Below, one piece after another: positions 143-31,960 of a stretch of 64,000 bases of DNA. Position numbers and translations under genes: made by a program. The stretch comes from Bispira polyomma (taxonomy: Eukaryota), in the NCBI GenBank assembly GCA_965649765.1, contig OZ287756.1:34348001-34412000 (forward strand), read 5' to 3'. Within the stretch, counting starts at the first letter, position 1. The number at the start of each line of letters is the position of its first letter. Under the pieces are notes generated by a model. That model saw only the letters and a list, made by a program, of their open reading frames with translations, was not told the DNA's origin and made no database searches.

Positions 143-363
143 AGTTTTAGTTTTACGTCGCTTAAACAGCTTGAGTCAAATATTTACAGCAGCCAGATTC
201 AATGGTGGAAGAAAACCAGTGTTGAAGCTCTGTAAACCACCAACCAACGGTAAGTACTTTCGCCGATAAAGGAACATACAGGATTCAAACCCACATTGGT
301 GAGAGGCCAACTAGCCAACTATTATGAACCAGACACTTCTAACCACTAGGCCACTGTGGCGCC
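143..363 (-). mobile_element. tRNA-headed SINE, family 2
   Basis: Reverse strand starts ggcgccacagtggcctagtggttaga (A-box) and ends gctgtttaagcgacgtaaaac-(taaaac)n. Homologous to copies at 12828, 19617, 45938. A partial second copy follows at about 378-497. Confidence 0.8.
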
Positions 364-922
364 AATTGGCTACATCACTACAAACCTATGGCAAGTACCT
401 GGCAAACTTCTCCCAGACTAAGAAAGTGCTAGGATTTGATCCCACTGTCATCAGATGTCAGAGGCTAGTGATATTTTAAAGGTAGTCCACCATGACCCCA
501 CTTATCCAAATAGTCTGTGGACAAAAATCACATAATCTTTAATGTACCCTATTGTTAATGTATCAATAAATCAATCAGTGGTAGACTAGTAGTACTAAAT
601 TAATTGTGTCAGAAGTATGGCATTGCCAACACTAGACAATGTCATGGAAACAGAAATAGGTCTGTCTGACTGGAATTACTAATTTGGAATTCTGTGGTCC
701 AACTTCTCCAAATCAATTTTAAGCTCAACTGAGACTCAAATTCAAGGTCTTCCTACTACCTATGAGATACTTAAAAATCTGACAGCATTTTTGAATTCAG
801 TGTGGAAAACTCTAAATTAAAATGAATGGCTTGCAAGCAGAGGTTATTTACTTGTACAATAATTTCCAGTGAAGCAAGCATTTGAATTGAGCTCCAGTTT
901 CTTTTTAAGAATATGTGGCCTG

Positions 923-1519: not shown

Positions 1520-3338
1520 ATTATATTTAACATATTTATTTTGTTTATTAAAGTGTTAAAAAACACTACAAACTGTCGTTTCACTCACTAAGTACAATAA
1601 ACAGACAAAACAACATTTTCAAAAGTAAGAGAAAAAGAGTTAATAAGTTAATAAATTATAAAAGATCTAAGACACTAATAACTCATCCAAATATAGTAAG
1701 GTATGTCATGTGCCACCTATAGACACATACACAGTTGATACATCATCAGTTGCATAAAAAGATGGACATATTTACTAACATATATATATTACACTAAGAC
1801 CAAAAATGTTACAAATTACAATAAATACTATACATTATTACTACTAAAAGTACAAATGCATGTACACATGATATATTATGAAAACTGTCCAAACAAAAAG
1901 GTCTTGCCCACATTTCATCAAGTCAAATTTGATTTTATGAAACCAATGAATTCTTTTTTTGTTTTTAAGTTTTGTGTATAGAGGTTCCAGCAATTTCTTT
2001 TTTAACACTTTTCAACCCAAAGATTTTGGTTATATAAATGTGTTAATTTTAAACCATTTTATGAACATTTGAAGGAAAATATAACACATGCTGGATATAT
2101 ATATACATTTATATGAGGCAGGAGTATATTCTTTGGATAGTTTTATAATATATACAGTATCTGTCAAAAAACCCTACATATTTATATAAATATACATAAT
2201 ATACATCTATAAGAGAGCTTCTGAGTATAATTGCAGTTTATATAATTAGATATATATCTATATATAAGAAGCAGTCAGCACTTTTACTCTGGTTACCAAT
2301 GGTAACCTACACACATCACAATAACAACATACATCAGCAGTGAGATTGCCATCCCTGATTTATTTTACCCCACAATTCCACAGTGGGTATTAAATAAGAT
2401 TCCTTCCATCATTTTTGTTTCAGCCAATCCCCTTCCCTGACACTGTGACTAGATATGGCAGTGATTTCGATTGTATATATTGTATAATGAAGTGGCTCGA
2501 ACAGCCGTGTATAGTAGGGATTTGCATACAGGAAGTGATGTCATTTTGACGTCATAATATTCTCAGGGAGCAATAAAACCCTATACAAAAGTATGGGGTC
2601 AAATGCCCACTGTACACTACTCTCGACATCCACTTGTAATATCTTATTAGGTGACAACATGTTATAGAATTTGAAAAAGAAATAGATTATAATAATTTAA
2701 AAAGCAGGAGCAACAATTGTTGGATGATATTTGCTTTTTGGTAATATTACCAAAAATACAATGACATATAAATGTCACCCTTTTCATATTTCTGAATATA
2801 TGACTTCTGAAAATGATTTACACTATTTTTTTTTTTAAATTAATTATTTCCTATTTATTTATTTACCTTCTGACATTATTAAGCTTTTTTGGTAACTAAT
2901 TACTTTATTGGGAAAAGTGTCTTCTTTTTACAGTTATTGCCTTTTTTTGTTCCAGATAATGTATAGACAAACATTAAAATGATGATAAGTCTGTTTTTGA
3001 AATTTTCCAATTGTCTGTTCCTCTTTGAAGGGTCTCCAGTTCTTTTAAAGGGTAGAAGCACAATAATGTTCTGAATGTTATTTGGTCTATTGGTGTGTGA
3101 ACATCAGGGAAGAGAAGATACCAGTAGTTGTTCTGTCTGGCAGTCCAGTTTGAGATCATTTGTGTAATGAGAGGGTTCATGAGGCTATGGCAGTTCTTTT
3201 TTGTAAATACAGTGGGTGATGATGAGATGGGATGGTAAAGCAGGGTGATCCGAAGCAAAGCTTGTCTACATGTAATTTTTTGTGTGTCTTTGTCAGATGA
3301 AAACCCATAACTTCTGTAGAAAGGCTGACAAATTTCTT
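1520..3338 (-). other. Putative long 3' UTR ending at tandem poly(A) signals
   Basis: Minus-strand AATAAA at 1549-1544 and 1540-1535, followed by a U/GU-rich tract (gttttcttactttttttgtttt). Very AT-rich and free of the SINEs seen elsewhere. Confidence 0.45.
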
Positions 3339-3355
3339 TCAAGGCCAAGGTATAT
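3339..3355 (-). CDS. Putative microprotein gene, terminal coding segment (DIPWP*)
   Basis: Strong acceptor (T-run then acag|) followed by AT ATA CCT TGG CCT TGA. Phase-1 join to exon 2 gives a 150-nt CDS (16+117+17) = 49 aa + stop. Confidence 0.58.
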
Positions 3356-4169
3356 CTGTAAAAAATAATGATAAACAAAGACTATACATATAAGAGTTAT
3401 ACTAGTAGTAGTAGTAAAACAATAAAAATGTCATTCATAGGTATGTTGTGTTAAAGACAGTTCAGATGTTAAAATGAAGGAGGGATGAGGAGGGCGAGGG
3501 AAAATGTACATCAATCAAATGTTTTTCAAAAGTTCTCCCTTTTTGTGGGGTGTAGAATGTTTGAAGGGAGAAAAGTTGGTCCTTTTTCACACGCCAAATA
3601 TCTATAGCCCCGTTAAATGAGTCACGATCTTTGGCAGTGGTTGGGGGTTTGAAATGATAAAACTCTTTGAAAGCATTGTGGGGTTGATACATTAGCCCAT
3701 ATATATATATACCATTAGATGTTTTTCTGACTCTCCAACTAGAAAGCCATCAATTCTTTCACAACAACATTTTGTGACGCAAAAGTACCCAACTTTTTGG
3801 GTTGTTTATGTGAATAGTAAAATCTATTTTGTGCCTGTGATATCAAAATTCGTGTAGCAGTTTTCACTAATATATTCCATACACTATACCTGTTTATATA
3901 TTTCAGTTAAAGAATTCTAACTTCTATAACATAAGTTTTTAACTTTATAGATATGTATTAGCTCAAACCTAATTTTATTCGTAGTAACAAAATCTTTACA
4001 TTAACCTTTTTTGTGTGAACATTTTGCATATATATCTATTTATTTTTTGCTTAATTAATTTTCTTACTAACATTCACTTGTAATACACTTAGTATAGTAA
4101 AACCTATGATTCTATGAAATACTTTATGCTCTTTGAGATGTAACTAGGTCAACCATTCGAAACACCTAC

Positions 4170-4286
4170 CGTGATCGGGACCCTGATCAATTAAGCCTTC
4201 CAGCTCGTCGGGGTCAAAGTAACTGACTTTTTCCGAGTACACTGACTCTTCTTTGGCGGGATGTACTAGTGACATCATTGTTGTTT
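4170..4286 (-). CDS. Putative microprotein gene, coding exon 2 (117 nt, phase 1-1: ETTMMSLVHPAKEESVYSEKVSYFDPDELEGLIDQGPDH)
   Basis: Acceptor ttttgatctttcag| and donor CACG|gtaggt. GC-richer, CpG-retaining island in AT-rich flanks. Only one frame is open across the exon and it matches the phase of exon 1. Confidence 0.7.
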
Positions 4287-5517
4287 CTGAAAGATCAAAA
4301 CACAAATCACCATAACAACGGGTTCACACTAGAAACATACACACAGAGACACAAATATAATCTCCAATATATCGGCAGTAACCAGATCTGGGTATCATAT
4401 TTCATTATTATGGTTTTTTCAAATCTTAGTTCAATGTCAAAATCAAGGACAATTTTATTGGTTACTTAAATATTTTCCTGGACAACTTGTCTAAACTTAT
4501 GGTAATGTTTAATGTCCTTGACCAAATGTGGGGCGTGTAGAGTGGGGGAGGAGGATTTGGCGCCATATTTACACGTGCATTACGCGAATTAGCTGGTGAA
4601 TCATTCATCAATTATGTCTCCAAGCTACTTGCTCTTGATCTTCTCTGTAATACTGTAAAAGTTGTAATTTTCACTAAGTGGCAATTAATTTTAGCTAAAT
4701 GAACATAGAATGAAAACTAAATCCATAATAAAGAATAAATTTGTATTTATTACTTATCAAGTAAAAAAATATATTTATTTAATAGTTGGAATTAATTCCA
4801 CAAAAAAATTTCCTCCAGCTAAACTTTCAGCTTGTCTACAAGTATTGAAAGTAGCCTTTTTGTAGATGATCACATGATCTAGGAGTTTGTTGTGTGGTTT
4901 GATGTTTGTGTGGACACACAAGATTACCAACAAGGCCAGCATCTCATATGACAAGTGTGTATGTTTGCCAAATATTACTGGACCCCAAAACACACGGTGT
5001 GGAGTTATTAAGTGCTAATAACACACCCAACCACCTAACAAAGCATGATCTGCATATTTTTGTGGACTGAAAGACTTATTAACATATTGTCATGTAACTC
5101 TAAAAATAGATGCACTTCTTGTTATTTTTCAAATGTTCTATTAATAAGATACACGAGACAGCTGAAACAATTATTTTCCTCAGACATACAAGACAGTTGC
5201 AACAATTATCAAATTATTAGTGCATCCCTCATTATTTACTTAGAACAACATTTTATAACCAGTGGTACACAGTTGAACCCTAATACTGAGTACATTAGAT
5301 GTATGATATATTTGCAAAATATCACTAAAATATCAGAATTAACTAAAGTACTTTCACACTATGACTTGATTAAATACTTCTAAACTTAGATGCACAGATC
5401 TCTAAATTTTATCTAACAATTACATCAACACAATCATCAAAATTATCCCAATATTCATAAAATAAAGTGAAACCTTTATACAATGCTTATTAAGAGAAAA
5501 TAATAATTAATATTTAC

Positions 5518-5533
5518 CTGTATTTGTAAACAT
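5518..5533 (-). CDS. Putative microprotein gene, coding exon 1 (MFTNT + phase-1 G)
   Basis: Minus strand reads gaagATG TTT ACA AAT ACA G|gtaaat. A at -3, strong donor, and this is the first ATG downstream of the TATA/Inr at 5851/5818. Confidence 0.62.
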
Positions 5534-5811
5534 CTTCGAACTTCTTCTCCTTATTCCAAACTATCAGCTGGCAATAGAATGTCAATTCAATGTCAATACT
5601 ATTCACACAGTTACACTCTGTAGATATATCTATTCGAGTTGTCCCTTTTGTTTTCCAAACTTAATCTGCTATATAACACTTTCAGAACTATATAGAAGAT
5701 CTATAGCTGCTTGTAAATATATCTCTTTTGTTAATAAAAGCCGTTGAAGCTGTCCTGTCGTAGATTGTATGTATATCTCTCTAGCTCGATACTTAATATT
5801 TAAGTTGATCA

Positions 5812-6180
5812 AGATTCTGAACTTTTCCTCTGGCCTACTGTGGCTTATATACAGTTTGGCACACCTAGGCTAACGTCACCACACACACAGCGACCAATCG
5901 TGGCCTTTTATTGTGTTCCTGACAAGACTCGTACCAAAAAAGGCCGTGCCAAGTGTCATGTTTGCTTTACAGACAAAAAACACTTTTAGGATGATATATG
6001 CTTGGAAACTAAAATTAATTATTTTTTTGTGTAACCAAGAGAAGTCAGACATATATTATTGCGAGACATTTGGGTATTTGAGTCACCAATCACGTGTCGA
6101 TTAGATAAGGATTTGACATATGATAATTGTGACACATTTTGACCATGATGTCAAAATCAAGTCAAAAATTGGCGGGAATA
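5812..6180 (-). promoter_or_regulatory. Pol II core and proximal promoter of the microprotein gene
   Basis: TATATAA at 5851-5845; Inr-like TCAGAAT with A at 5818; CRE half-site CGTCA 5874-5878; CCAAT 5894-5898; abutting TGAGTCA/CCAAT/CACGTG 6079-6096; E2F-like TTGGCGGGAA 6169-6178. Confidence 0.55.
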
Positions 6181-7707
6181 TCGTATACAAGTAGTAGAGA
6201 AACATGAGATTCAGCTTGTTGAGCAAAATCTATTTAATGATTGTGGGTTGTTGTTATATTATTCCTTGAGTAAATTGTTATGAGTATTTTGGAAATGTAT
6301 GTATATGTGTGTGTGGGCGGAGGGAAAACATGCAAAGAGTTATGAAGTGGACTGGTATTATTGTTTCTTTATTTTGGCAATTTGTCTATACCCATAAAAC
6401 TGAAATGTGCTTCCGAAAAAAGACCCAGACAAAAATGGCTTTTGCTTTCTTTTTTTTAAGGACAGATATTGTGAAAGAACATAATTAATGATATAGCATA
6501 TTGTAAATTTATATAGAGCATTCTGGATCTATAATGACTCAGGATTAAGAAATGGCTATACCAACTGGGATTTTCCCCCCTCCAATACCAGCTTAAATAC
6601 CCCAAATCGCATAGTTCTGTCCGTCAGCGTGTGTTGTGCCCCGCTCACACATTGGTGGTATGTTAGGCGGTACCAGAGAGGTCTTTTAACTTGTCTTTAC
6701 ATCTATTAAATCGGCTGTTCCATCTAGGTGGAATTATACCCCACTGAAGTTTGTCAAGATAAGTTTTACAGCGGAAAACAGATGATTACTGTCATGGAAG
6801 ACTTACAGTAGTGATTCAGCAATACTCGAATATACTCGGAAACGAGCAGAAGTATTTTTCTGCCTTTTGACCCTACCCCTTGCATGGCTGACTGTAGAAG
6901 GTGCAGAAAGGAAGCTAAACTTATAGGAAGAGCTGGATAATCCTTTTTGCTTTGCAAACCATGTATATACCGACCTGTAGACAGTCTAAGGCCAACTTTG
7001 ACGGATATATGCCATGGTCCAGATTCCAACCCACCCTCTACACCACAGAGACTGTTCCATTATGTTATTACACAAGTAGATGAAAATATGAGAACTTTTT
7101 AATGTGTGGGGGTGAGGGGTAAGATGTTTCAGTGGTGATTCAGTTAGACCATCTGCCCGTGTTCCGTTCCCCCCCCCCCACCCCCCACCCCACCCGCTCT
7201 ATGCAGCCATACGTTGCATGCATTTATGTATGTAGGTGTACTGAAATTGCAAATTACCCGTAAAACTACTACATAATACCCAATCATTATTTCACATTAT
7301 GAAATGCTATTAAATCAACCCATCCATTCATGTGTAAGGACACATCCACTTTTGACAAATTCCAGGGTCAGTTTACGCAATTGGGGACCCACCACCGTAT
7401 CAGAGGGGAGGATGCGCCTTTAAGTGTTTCTGTTACATTACACCCATTCATAATACTAATATGTAAATGTAAGAATATAAGGCAAGTCCATCAAATGAGA
7501 CATAAGGGGTTGCTAAAATGCCCCCCCCCCCCCCTCTGCCTCTCCACACCACCGGAAGCAAGGGTTTCATTGTTACAAAATGGGGCGTTGTCTTTAAAAA
7601 GAGTTGAATTTCTAACTTTATGAATAAACAGAGGAAATATCATGTTCCTAAACGATATGTAATAATAGCCTTTTCCAGGTCTCTACATTCTTGCAGGGTG
7701 ATAGTTT

Positions 7708-10094: not shown

Positions 10095-10125
10095 CTATAT
10101 GACGTCACCCTTATATGACGTCACC
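10095..10125. promoter_or_regulatory. Tandem pair of perfect CRE sites
   Basis: TGACGTCA at 10100-10107 and 10116-10123 within a 16-bp direct repeat. Confidence 0.4.
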
Positions 10126-24439: not shown

Positions 24440-24770
24440 TGGACTGAGAGACAAAAATCAAATGTGACATCACTGGACTGAAGGGACAAGAATCGACATC
24501 TGCTAAATGAGACGTCACTAAAGTGACAAGAATCAACATCTGCTAAATGTGACGTCACAGGACTAAAGAGACAAGAATCAACGTCTGCTAAATGTGACGT
24601 CACTGGACTAAAGTAACAAGAATCAACATCTGTTAAATGTGACGTCACTACACTAAAGATACAATAATCAATGCCATATTTCACCTAAATGAACTAGGGA
24701 CAAAAATCAACGTCTGCTAAATGCAACATCACTAGACTAAAGAGACAACAATCGCGATCAGCAAAATATG
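24440..24770. repeat. 45-bp minisatellite carrying GTGACGTCAC palindromes
   Basis: Unit tgctaaatgtgacgtcacaggactaaagagacaagaatcaacgtc, about 7 copies; perfect CREs at about 24550, 24595, 24640. The flank 24195-24490 is duplicated at 24840-25155 with a further CRE at about 25132. Confidence 0.85.
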
Positions 24771-25259
24771 ACCGAGATTCGAACCCAATGGTATCAGAGA
24801 TGGTAGGCAAGAGTTTTACCTTTACACCACTGAGGGATTACACACAAGACATCAGGACACGCATACAGTGTGATACTACAAGCTTCATGTCTTAACAAGA
24901 TATAATATTTAATTTGTTCAAAGATCTTTAACAAGGTTGACATATCTGTCTTTGAGAGCTTGTAGTCATTTGTCAAAGCTTGTCTCTTCTTTATTATATG
25001 GCCAAGGCTATAGTAGTAGATCAATTTATATATAGAGATCTCTGGTACATACATTGACAGCTGCCCTTGAAAGTGTCAGGTGAAATGGGACCGAAATGGA
25101 CTGAGGGACAATCATCAAAGTCTGCTAAATGTGACGTCACTAGACTGAAGGGTCGAGATTATTGTTATTACTGAATGTATATGATAACATATGACATTCA
25201 AATAAAAGGTATTCTATTATATATGATATAGTACCAGAACAAGCAGGTTACAACATTAC

Positions 25260-30189: not shown

Positions 30190-31960
30190 GTATGATGAGA
30201 TTGCACTTTTACCACATTGGATGGATGTAGAGGCAGCATGCATGGCACAGTAGAACTACTGGTTCTATCTGTGCTACACGCAATATGGCAGGAGAACATG
30301 GATGAGTGTCTGGGTAAGAAGAAGGTGTCTGATATTTATTGCATGCATAAGCAGTGTGAGACATTGTAGGTCGAGTTGGAGCTGGAGGACATGGCAGCTT
30401 TCTGGGAATTTAAAGTAAGTATGTTTAAAGATAATGTTAAGAACCAATAATATAATAATATAGTGTAATAGTCCATATCTAGGTTCACTTTGGCTCTTTC
30501 TCCATTTAGTATTCCGTCTGGGGTAACTAGGCAGGCAGGCAGACCGGCAGGCTACTGAACTGTGGATGCAGTCTTCCGTTCGAGGAGATGAATGGGACAT
30601 CTTGTAGTCGCACCGACGTTGAAAGTATGCTTCCTGGCGGGGGGGGGGGGGGGGGGGGATCTTTTGACAGAGGCTACATTTCAAAAGACTTTTCAAGTTC
30701 TAGAAGTATTATTTAAATTAATTATATTTACAAGTAATGTTACATTACATTACCTGTCTTTTATTTTTACATTTAGGGTTAGATGATATTAAATTAGAAA
30801 CAGGGGGGGTGTTTGGCTTTGGCGGGGGGGGGGGGGGTGGCTTGGCTCTCATCTTGCCTTTTGATCTTTTGACAGATGCTCATGCTGGAGGGGGGGGGGG
30901 GGGTGGCTCTCTTCTTGCATTTTGACCTTTTGACAGAGTCTCATGCTGGAGGGGGGATTGGCTCTCTTCTTGCCTTTTGACCTTTTGACAGATGCTCATG
31001 CTGGAGGGGGGGGGGGGGGTTGGCTCTCTTCTTGCCTTTTGACAGAGTCTCATGCTGGAGAAGGGGGTCTTGGCTCTCTTTTTGGCTTTTGACAGAGGCT
31101 CATGCTAGAGGATGGGGGGAGGGGGGGGTCTTGGCTCTATTTTTGCCTTTGGACCTTTTGACAGAGTCTCATGCTGGAGACTATTGATATCATTGTCTCC
31201 AGGACATGTAATGTTGGGTCTCTTCGGACTAACTTTGAATAGTAATTACTACATTTCGAAAGAGTTTTCAAGTTCTAGAAGTATAATTTAAATTAATTAT
31301 ATTTACAATTAATGTTAGATTACTTTACCTGCTGTCTTTTATTTTTACATTTAGGGTTAGATGATATTACATTAAATTAGGAACAAACTTGCATATCAAG
31401 TCAATATCAACTGAAAAAGGTTTAGATCTGAAAAGCTCGATGTGGCGGGTGATGTTCACCTTTAAGAAGTCAAATTTGGCAAGGATCCATCAGTCTCGCT
31501 CTGTCAACTTCTTGGCCACCACTCCAGCAACTGGCTTGGTGAGCTTGCCATAGTGTGTTCTTATTGACCTCCACAACACGTTCAGAGTAGTCACTGTCAC
31601 ACCAAGAGTTACATCTTTTTCTTCTTCTTGGTGTCTTTGTAATTTATGAGACCCATTCTTTAGAACATTGAGTTCTCTTTCAGGAATTCACTCAGCATGT
31701 CCTCTGCCTCATTCCTAAAGGTGACATGGACCTTGAGTCTCCTCTCGCCTTTTGACAGAGGCTCACCCTAGAGACGCTTTAGATCACTGTCTCCGGGGCA
31801 TGTCATGTTGGGTCTCTTCAGACTGACCTTCAAACTTCTCATCTTCTCCTGGTTGGGTGTAAAACAGGCTGCTGTGTCTCGGGTACAGTGTGTCCACATT
31901 CTCAACCTCCAGTGTTCTTTTTCCATCCATGGATAACCAAACTCCTATCACCTCACCTAT
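30190..31960. mobile_element. Decayed, internally rearranged PIF/Harbinger transposon
   Basis: Plus strand about 30280-30415: RRTWMSVWVRRR..QCETL*VELELEDMAAFWEF, like a Harbinger transposase N-terminus. Minus strand about 31440-31760: EAEDMLSEFLKENS..NYKDTKKK..LWRSIRTHYGKLTK..AKKLTERD*WILAKFDFLK, a MADF/Myb-SANT ORF2. The two are convergent; TIRs not located. Confidence 0.7.
30635..31185. repeat. G-run minisatellite inside the Harbinger relic
   Basis: Unit of about 45-65 bp: ttttgacagagtctcatgctgga-G(n)-ttggctctcttcttgcc, with variable G tracts up to about 20 nt. Confidence 0.85.

What the first reader, a model, noticed from the sequence alone, without database searches (positions are those of the whole stretch)
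3339..5851. Hidden three-exon gene for a 49-aa acidic microprotein ending in IPWP
Seen: TATA and Inr about 33 nt apart; a leader of about 285 nt (5818-5534) with no ATG, where roughly five would be expected at this composition; an ATG with A at -3; two canonical GT-AG introns with matching phase 1; a stop 17 nt into the last exon; tandem AATAAA about 1.8 kb further on. Product: MFTNTETTMMSLVHPAKEESVYSEKVSYFDPDELEGLIDQGPDHDIPWP. No signal peptide or TM helix is apparent and I recognise no family. Each coding piece is too short for the ORF track. Inference: a disordered adaptor-like peptide with possible short motifs (YFDPDEL, C-terminal IPWP), likely to be unannotated or labelled lncRNA.
Basis: partly seen in the sequence, partly recalled or inferred. 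Interest (0 to 1): 0.8.

Follow-up and report, generated by a model that had tools for sequence, protein, structure and literature searches.

The report
Unannotated three-exon acidic microprotein gene candidate
A small, single-copy, three-exon gene for a 49-residue acidic, probably unfolded peptide is well supported by the DNA signals of this worm genome, but it has no detectable relatives and no expression data could be obtained, so it is a plausible ordinary orphan small gene rather than a proven one.

Summary
The only correction is that the stop codon is at 3341-3339.

New tests favour a real gene:
- Exon 2 (4286-4170) has the codon usage of this genome's real exons. Its log-odds is +5.46, reached by 0.6% of open non-coding segments.
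- GC by codon position is 0.61/0.32/0.50, against 0.50/0.33/0.51 in real exons.
- All four splice sites rank in the top 1-2% on their strand, with almost no competitors.
- Exon 2 is the only open acceptor-donor pair in the 64 kb with a positive coding score.
- The TATA+Inr+CRE-half+CCAAT combination occurs once in the window, at this start site.
- The ATG-free run before the start codon is 426 nt.

Evidence that is missing:
- Pfam, NCBIfam, PDB, the ESM Atlas, a word search and an exhaustive search of 1.84 billion proteins gave no true relative.
- The joined 49-aa sequence was not searched, by operators' rule.
- Conservation could not be tested.

Verdict: probably a real, lineage-restricted small gene, confidence about 0.5 for the full reading. 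Function is only inferred: a disordered acidic peptide acting through short motifs, possibly stimulus-induced. Interest is modest. The scan holds this same stretch once more as note s1-688839.

The parts
6079..6096 (-). Upstream composite element CACGTG-ATTGG-TGACTCA (E-box, inverted CCAAT, AP-1-type site) at about -260 to -280
   Evidence: Read and located. The motif assignment comes from general knowledge of consensus sites. Function is inferred.
5894..5898 (-). Inverted CCAAT box (ATTGG on the gene strand) at about -78
   Evidence: It is part of the four-motif composite that occurs once in the window.
5871..5878 (-). CRE-like site TGACGTTA (contains the half-site TGACG) at about -57
5844..5851 (-). 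TATA box TATATAAG, 31-33 nt upstream of the Inr A
5518..5818 (-). Exon 1: putative start site (A of TCAGAAT at 5818), a 285-nt ATG-free leader (5818-5534), the start codon 5533-5531, then 16 coding nt ending in phase 1
   Evidence: The donor after 5518 scores in the 99.1th percentile of GT sites and is one of only two donors scoring 3 or more between the start site and 4100. It is the only phase-compatible first exon with a long ATG-free leader in the 24 kb upstream.
4287..5517 (-). Intron 1 (1231 nt, GT-AG, phase 1). It contains a single-copy GC/CpG-richer island at 4481-4640 with a CACGTG at 4572-4577
   Evidence: GC is 0.31 and CpG o/e is 0.30.
4170..4286 (-). Exon 2 (117 nt), which codes for 38 full codons plus two split codons
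   Evidence: GC 0.47 and CpG o/e 0.93, against 0.31 and 0.3-0.4 in the introns. Codon log-odds +5.46, reached by 0.6% of the null. It is the best-scoring coding-like segment in the first 30 kb. It is the only open acceptor-donor pair in the window with a positive score. GC by codon position is 0.61/0.32/0.50.
3356..4169 (-). Intron 2 (814 nt, GT-AG, phase 1). It contains a single-copy GC-richer island at about 3540-3700 with a TGACTCA at 3618-3624
2880..3355 (-). Exon 3: 14 coding nt, the stop TGA at 3341-3339, then the 3'UTR up to the nearest poly(A) signals (AATAAA 2909-2904 and 2863-2854).
   Evidence: The acceptor scores in the 98.1th percentile. A second good acceptor at 3313 would give a 45-aa tail with non-coding-like codon usage.

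Best explanation
A real, single-copy, lineage-restricted (orphan) RNA polymerase II gene that the collections searched do not annotate.

A TATA/Inr core promoter with CCAAT and CRE-like elements would drive a three-exon mRNA. Its long ATG-free leader delivers scanning ribosomes to the first ATG, at 5533. The product is a 49-residue, cysteine-free, arginine-free, strongly acidic peptide, counted by eye as 11 D/E against 2 K.

The peptide has no signal peptide or membrane helix and is predicted to be mostly coil. It most likely acts in the cytosol or nucleus as a disordered ligand or decoy that binds a partner protein. The likely contacts are its acidic-hydrophobic segment (SYFDPDELEGLI) and its aromatic-proline C-terminus.

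CRE-like, AP-1-type and E-box motifs lie in and around the gene. They suggest, but do not show, that expression is stimulus-dependent.

Shown: the sequence signals, the coding-type composition of exon 2, single copy, and the absence of relatives. Inferred: transcription, splicing, translation, disorder, binding mode and inducibility.
For: - Coordinates and translation check out.
- The ATG-free run is 426 nt, in the top 5 of 2635 gaps.
- An in-frame stop lies 10 codons upstream of the ATG.
- The codon-usage model was trained on 5599 codons of this genome's myosin and kinase exons. Exon 2 scores +5.46, the 61st percentile of real 38-codon pieces. Only 0.6% of 684 open non-coding segments reach that score, and 1.6% of GC-matched ones.
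- Exon 2 is the top coding-like segment in the first 30 kb.
- GC by codon position matches real exons.
- All four splice sites lie in the top 1-2% by a rough weight matrix. The model's donors are the only two scoring 3 or more between the start site and 4100. Exon 2's acceptor is the only one scoring 2.5 or more in intron 1.
- Exon 2 is the only one of 11 open acceptor-donor pairs in the window with a positive coding score.
- The four-motif promoter composite is unique in the window, with 0.1 expected.
- It is the only phase-compatible first exon with a long ATG-free leader in 24 kb.
- All parts are single copy, so it is not a repeat.
- No Rfam family matches, so it is not a known RNA gene.
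- AlphaFold2 on exon 2 gives coil.
Against: - There is no expression evidence.
- No homologue was found in any search. The two nominal hits are artefacts.
- Conservation is untested.
- The promoter composite and the splice and score thresholds were defined after seeing the locus. The splice matrices are generic values recalled from general knowledge, not trained on this genome.
- Exons 1 and 3 contribute only 5 codons each and carry no coding signal of their own. Exon 1's five codons score -1.85.
- A second good acceptor at 3313 would change the C-terminus.
- By the 0.6% null rate, about four open non-coding segments in a window this size reach exon 2's codon score by chance.
Confidence: 0.5

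Rival explanations
1. The locus is transcribed and spliced as modelled, but the RNA works as a non-coding RNA or has no function. On this reading the 49-codon ORF is incidental or only weakly translated.
For: No relatives of the peptide were found anywhere. The ORF is very short. The first and last exons carry no coding signal. Many spliced TATA-driven transcripts with short ORFs are non-coding (general knowledge).
Against: Exon 2 has real-exon codon usage and three-base GC periodicity. Both introns share one phase, so the frame runs through. The 426-nt ATG desert ending at a start codon with A at -3 is what selection for translating that ATG would produce.
Confidence: 0.2
2. A chance constellation. 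AT-rich DNA offers many TATA-like, AATAAA, GT and AG sites, and a reader searching by eye assembled them into a gene. Nothing is transcribed here.
For: The window holds 26 TATA+Inr pairs and 36 ORFs of 50 aa or more in the first 14 kb. The finding was selected by eye, and my thresholds were set after the fact. There is no RNA evidence and no homologue.
Against: These are codon usage trained elsewhere in the genome and a window-wide enumeration of acceptor-donor pairs. Competing splice sites are nearly absent. The four-motif promoter occurs once, with 0.1 expected.
Confidence: 0.2
3. Exon 2 is a real coding exon of a different or larger transcript. It could have a distant upstream first exon, or another 3' exon such as the one starting at acceptor 3313. 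The true product would then differ from the 49-aa peptide.
For: A second good acceptor at 3313 gives an 88-aa alternative. Single-copy coding-like segments exist 26 kb upstream on the same strand, at 31672-31957. Introns in this genome can be long.
Against: No other phase-compatible first exon with a good donor and an ATG-free leader exists in the 24 kb upstream. The tail after 3313 has non-coding codon usage, -0.13 per codon. No convincing coding-like segment lies on the gene strand in the remaining 3.3 kb of the window or the next 5 kb downstream. No protein of any length in 1.84 billion representatives contains an exon-2-like stretch.
Confidence: 0.1

Closest known systems
Lineage-restricted small-ORF (microprotein) genes of animals that annotation pipelines miss because each coding exon is short
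   Same: The ORF is under 100 codons and split over short exons. It has its own promoter and start codon, no recognisable domain, predicted disorder and no detectable homologues.
   Different: Accepted microproteins rest on ribosome profiling, mass spectrometry or conservation. None of these is available here.
CITED-family CR2 region, a small acidic transactivation segment that binds the CBP/p300 TAZ1 domain
   Same: Resemblance recalled from memory only. Both are acidic-hydrophobic disordered segments, there is a shared MSLV tetrapeptide, and CITED genes are stimulus-induced.
   Different: No Pfam match at E up to 10 and no hit in the exhaustive search. The LPEL-type motif is absent and the peptide is far shorter. 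It is not a member.
Heat-stable small acidic regulators such as the protein kinase A inhibitor PKI and DSS1/SEM1
   Same: Small, acidic, unfolded peptides that act by binding a partner. DSS1 also relies on acidic-tryptophan patches.
   Different: PKI needs an arginine-rich pseudosubstrate, and this peptide has no arginine at all. No Pfam, PDB or sequence match to either.

Membership tests
Small-ORF / microprotein gene (operational class) | An ORF of 100 codons or fewer with an AUG in usable context, reachable by scanning | tested here: met
   The ORF has 49 codons. It starts at the first ATG after a 285-nt ATG-free leader, with A at -3 and an in-frame stop 10 codons upstream.
Small-ORF / microprotein gene (operational class) | Coding-type sequence statistics | tested here: met
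   Exon 2 has a codon log-odds of +5.46, at the 0.6% tail of the null, and GC periodicity like real exons. Exons 1 and 3 are too short to test.
Small-ORF / microprotein gene (operational class) | The transcript exists and is spliced as modelled | not testable with these tools
   No RNA run holds the locus.
Small-ORF / microprotein gene (operational class) | Translation (ribosome footprints or peptide) or purifying selection in orthologues | not testable with these tools
   No such data and no related eukaryotic genomes are reachable. No relatives were found in the protein collections.
CITED (Pfam CITED family) | A conserved CR2 domain detectable by profile, with an LPEL-type TAZ1-binding motif | tested here: not met
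   Pfam scan of exon 2 at E up to 10 matched no family. There was no hit in 1.84 billion representatives. No LPEL is present in the translation.
PKI (cAMP-dependent protein kinase inhibitor) | An arginine-rich pseudosubstrate (RRNAI-type) and a profile match | tested here: not met
   The exon translations contain no arginine and there is no Pfam match.
Known RNA families (Rfam), e.g. a snoRNA host gene | A match to a covariance model within the exons or introns | tested here: not met
   No match at E up to 1 in 2212-3474 or 3511-6400.

The most novel reading that the evidence does not exclude
A stimulus-induced (CREB/AP-1/bHLH-driven) acidic microprotein that feeds back on the pathway that induces it. 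For example, it could occupy the activator-binding groove of a coactivator or a kinase, as CITED or PKI do, but with an unrelated sequence confined to one worm lineage.
Probability: 0.05. Interest if true: 0.6.

Novelty: new member of a known kind. Interest (0 to 1): 0.3.

Why it matters
If it is real, this is one more example of a protein-coding gene that standard annotation cannot see because every coding exon is tiny. It also offers a compact, well-defined promoter and leader for studying regulated expression in a little-studied animal. The peptide has no relatives, so its biology would be lineage-specific. The general lesson is methodological rather than a new principle: genome-trained codon statistics plus a splice-site census can triage by-eye micro-gene calls.

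Tried and rejected
- RNA evidence. The look-up of sequencing runs gave three runs of unknown kind that hold all words, introns included, so they are DNA-like.
As an extra precaution I meant also to avoid 3475-3510, the same numbers counted from 1300. One Pfam query (the ORF at 3462-3692) did overlap that precautionary range.
- Homology of exon 2. Pfam, NCBIfam, PDB sequences and the ESM Atlas gave nothing. The word search also gave nothing (one search failed on the length limit).
- Exhaustive phmmer gave only P0001. This is an 1806-aa protein with 12 copies of an acidic repeat. Each copy matches at about 25 bits, which is far from significant for that library, so I rejected it as a repeat-summed artefact.
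- The metagenome scan gave one contig (one search failed on the length limit). It matched only the word QGPDHGRC, whose last three residues are intron read-through, so I rejected it.
- The joined 49-aa sequence was not searched, folded or looked up, by operators' rule. The coding parts of exons 1 and 3 are too short for any search.
- The 134-codon open frame at 2974-3378, which overlaps exon 3 in another frame, has no Pfam match and non-coding codon usage. Rejected as coding.
- An alternative first exon next to the CRE-TATA pair at 10100-10123 has the right phase but a poor donor (-0.79) and almost no leader. Rejected.
- A literature search for the C-terminal tetrapeptide returned only climate papers.
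- Four loci fetched for long myosin frames (L020-L023) turned out not to give clean coding sequence and were dropped from the training set.

Full report
**Observation**

- Promoter: TATATAAG at 5851-5844, and TCAGAATC with the A at 5818.
- Start: ATG at 5533-5531 in the context TCGAAGATGT.
- Exon 1 ends at 5518 (CAG|GTAAAT).
- Exon 2 is 4286-4170 (tttcag|A ... ACG|GTAGGT).
- Exon 3 starts at 3355 (ttttttacag|A).
- The stop is TGA at 3341-3339.
- Both introns are phase 1.

The leader 5818-5534 has no ATG. The ATG-free run is in fact 426 nt (5959 to 5533). That puts it among the five longest of 2635 inter-ATG gaps on both strands of the window, where the mean gap is 48.5 nt. An in-frame stop lies 10 codons upstream of the ATG.

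The tandem AATAAA at 1549-1535 exists. So do AATAAA signals at 2909-2904 and 2863-2854, which are 430-480 nt after the stop.

**Setting**

The window is G000:C9:34348001-34412000 of a 1.035-Gb assembly in 75 contigs. An earlier agent's note calls the animal a worm. I did not verify the species. The DNA is about 35% G+C.

Exon 2, the promoter with its leader, the exon 3 region and two GC-richer intronic islands are all single copy in the genome. The locus is therefore not a repeat.

**Is it more than chance? Four tests**

1. Codon usage.
   - I collected exon pieces of this genome's own myosin-head and protein-kinase genes that are free of stops. This gave 5599 codons after four unsuitable loci were dropped.
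   - I scored codons against the window's non-coding trinucleotide frequencies.
   - Exon 2 scores +5.46. That is the 61st percentile of held-out real 38-codon pieces (mean +4.1).
   - Only 0.6% of 684 open non-coding 38-codon segments reach it (mean -4.3), and 1.6% of GC-matched ones.
   - Its maximal-scoring stretch (8.9) is the highest in the first 30 kb of the window.
   - GC by codon position is 0.61/0.32/0.50, against 0.50/0.33/0.51 in the training exons.
   - Exon 2 has GC 0.47 and CpG o/e 0.93, against 0.31 and 0.3-0.4 in the introns.
2. Splice sites.
   - I used a rough weight matrix. Its values are generic metazoan figures from general knowledge, used for ranking only.
   - The four sites fall at the 99.1, 99.2, 98.3 and 98.1 percentiles of all GT or AG on that strand.
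   - Between the start site and 4100, the only two donors scoring 3 or more are the model's two.
   - Within intron 1, the only acceptor scoring 2.5 or more is exon 2's.
   - After exon 2 there are two good acceptors, 3355 (the model's) and 3313.
   - The tail that 3313 would add has non-coding codon usage, -0.13 per codon.
3. Census of possible exons.
   - Over both strands of the whole window there are only 11 open acceptor-donor pairs of 50-300 nt with both sites scoring 3.5 or more.
   - Exon 2 is the only one with a positive coding score. The next best is -1.4 and lies inside a retrotransposon.
4. Promoter and first exon.
   - The combination tested was TATAWA, then YCA[GT]W 28-34 nt later, plus a CRE half-site and a CCAAT box within -35 to -120.
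   - It occurs once in the window, at 5818. First-order Markov simulations give 0.1 per window. I defined this composite after seeing the site, so it counts for less.
   - Among all phase-1 first-exon candidates with a decent donor in the 24 kb upstream, only this one has a long ATG-free leader, 423 nt against at most 42 nt.

Together these tests make a pure chance constellation unlikely.

**What is missing**

- Expression. No run on record as RNA holds the stretch. The three holders carry all sampled words, introns included.
- Read laying. I worked beside those places from then on.
- Homology. Searches were done exon by exon, by reference. The joined peptide was not searched, folded or looked up. 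The coding parts of exons 1 and 3 are too short to search.
  - Exon 2 has no Pfam or NCBIfam family at E up to 10.
  - It has no PDB sequence match and no usable ESM Atlas neighbour.
  - The word search found no candidate.
  - The exhaustive phmmer search of 1.84 billion representatives returned one protein, P0001. This is an 1806-residue protein with twelve copies of an acidic repeat. Each copy aligns at about 25 bits. That is far below significance for a library of 2.4e11 residues, so the E-value of 1.5e-10 is a sum over repeats and not homology.
  - A metagenome scan gave one contig. It matched only a word that includes intron read-through residues.
- Power of these searches. A 38-residue query detects only fairly close relatives, and small spliced ORFs are under-represented in such collections. 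Absence of hits shows that the gene is unannotated and has no conserved family. It does not show that the gene is unreal.
- Conservation.

**Alternatives examined**

- Known RNA genes or snoRNA hosts: no Rfam match at E up to 1.
- A longer protein from the 134-codon open frame at 2974-3378: no family, and non-coding codon usage.
- A distant or alternative first exon by the CRE-TATA pair at 10100-10123: poor donor.
- More exons downstream: nothing convincing on the gene strand in the rest of the window or the next 5 kb. Retrotransposon fragments lie about 10-15 kb further down.

**How it most likely works**

The shown parts are the promoter-like motifs, the leader, the exon structure and the coding statistics. 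The rest is inferred.

- Transcription would start at about 5818.
- The ATG-free leader lets scanning ribosomes reach the first ATG.
- The product is a 49-residue peptide counted by eye as 11 Asp/Glu, 2 Lys, 2 His, no Arg and no Cys. It has no hydrophobic stretch long enough for a signal peptide or membrane helix.
- AlphaFold2 on exon 2 alone gives coil with a single helical turn at PDEL (mean pLDDT 70, pTM 0.16).
- Such a peptide would most plausibly act by binding a partner. The likely contacts are an acidic-hydrophobic segment that folds on binding, and the C-terminal Ile-Pro-Trp-Pro.

Several regulatory-type motifs lie in or near the gene:

- a CRE-like site at -57;
- a packed CACGTG-ATTGG-TGACTCA element at about -270;
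- a CACGTG in intron 1 and a TGACTCA in intron 2;
- a perfect CRE with ETS-like and octamer motifs about 800 nt past the stop.

These hint at stimulus-dependent expression. They are consensus matches only.

**Comparison with known systems**

It works like other small acidic unfolded regulators, such as the CITED CR2 region, PKI and DSS1. It fails the membership tests for them: there is no profile match, no arginine for a PKI pseudosubstrate, and no LPEL motif. It belongs to the operational class of unannotated small-ORF genes.

**Verdict**

| Reading | Probability |
|---|---|
| Real gene coding for the 49-aa peptide | about 0.5 |
| Real transcript whose ORF does not matter | about 0.2 |
| Chance constellation | about 0.2 |
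| Exon 2 belongs to another transcript form | about 0.1 |

Novelty: a new member of a known kind. Interest is 0.3. Orphan small genes are common, and nothing here yet points to unusual biology. The scan holds this same stretch once more as note s1-688839.

Noticed in passing
window 2547-25139, and 20 kb beyond the window start (L044, L045): The perfect palindromic CRE TGACGTCA occurs 9 times in the window, against 0.37 expected. The sites come in pairs or triplets: 10100/10116, 16867/16885, and 24550/24595/24640 plus 25132. Six more lie in the adjoining 20 kb, and none in 33 kb of control loci. The 24550-25139 sites share one repeated context, three of them spaced 45 bp apart. Three flank sites share another repeat. 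Part of the excess is therefore local duplication. This is the subject of note s1-689022.
   Followed up: partly
window 2424-2554: A dense motif cluster lies about 800 nt past the stop codon: TGACGTCA (2547-2554), CAGGAAGT ETS-type (2529-2536), octamer ATGCAAAT (2520-2527) and CCAAT (2424-2428). It could be an enhancer or a separate promoter. It argues against a simple 1.8-kb 3'UTR.
   Followed up: partly
window 10100-10123: Two tandem copies of GTGACGTCATATA(A/G)GG, each a CRE abutting a TATA-like box. No convincing first exon was found next to them.
   Followed up: partly
window 4481-4640 and 3540-3700: Single-copy islands within introns 1 and 2 that are richer in GC and CpG. They carry CACGTG and TGACTCA respectively. 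They may be intronic regulatory elements.
   Followed up: partly
window 2974-3378 (-): A 134-codon open frame overlaps exon 3 in another frame. That is unusually long for 30% G+C DNA, but it has no family match and non-coding codon usage.
   Followed up: yes
window 31672-31957 (-): Two adjacent coding-like segments score 9.5 and 10.6 on codon log-odds. The larger one (31787-31957) is single copy, neither has a Pfam family, and an ATG lies at about 31930 after a TATA-like run. This may be another small unannotated gene.
   Followed up: partly
window 30500-31300: A G-rich tandem repeat region gives runs of Gly in several frames and spuriously high coding scores.
   Followed up: no
window 280-370 and 24800-24880: tRNA-like sequences with a GGTTCGAATC-type box B, suggesting tRNA-derived SINE copies. 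They were seen by eye and not run through a tRNA finder.
   Followed up: no
G000, many chromosomes; e.g. C4:97.6-99.1 Mb: The genome holds dozens of intronless protein-kinase open frames of 411-418 aa scattered over the chromosomes. It also holds a tandem array of 345-356-aa kinases on C4. This is a lineage-specific expansion or a mobile-element cargo.
   Followed up: no
L044/L045, about 9.7-15 kb beyond the window start: Coding-like open frames include reverse-transcriptase-like (non-LTR retrotransposon) stretches.
   Followed up: no
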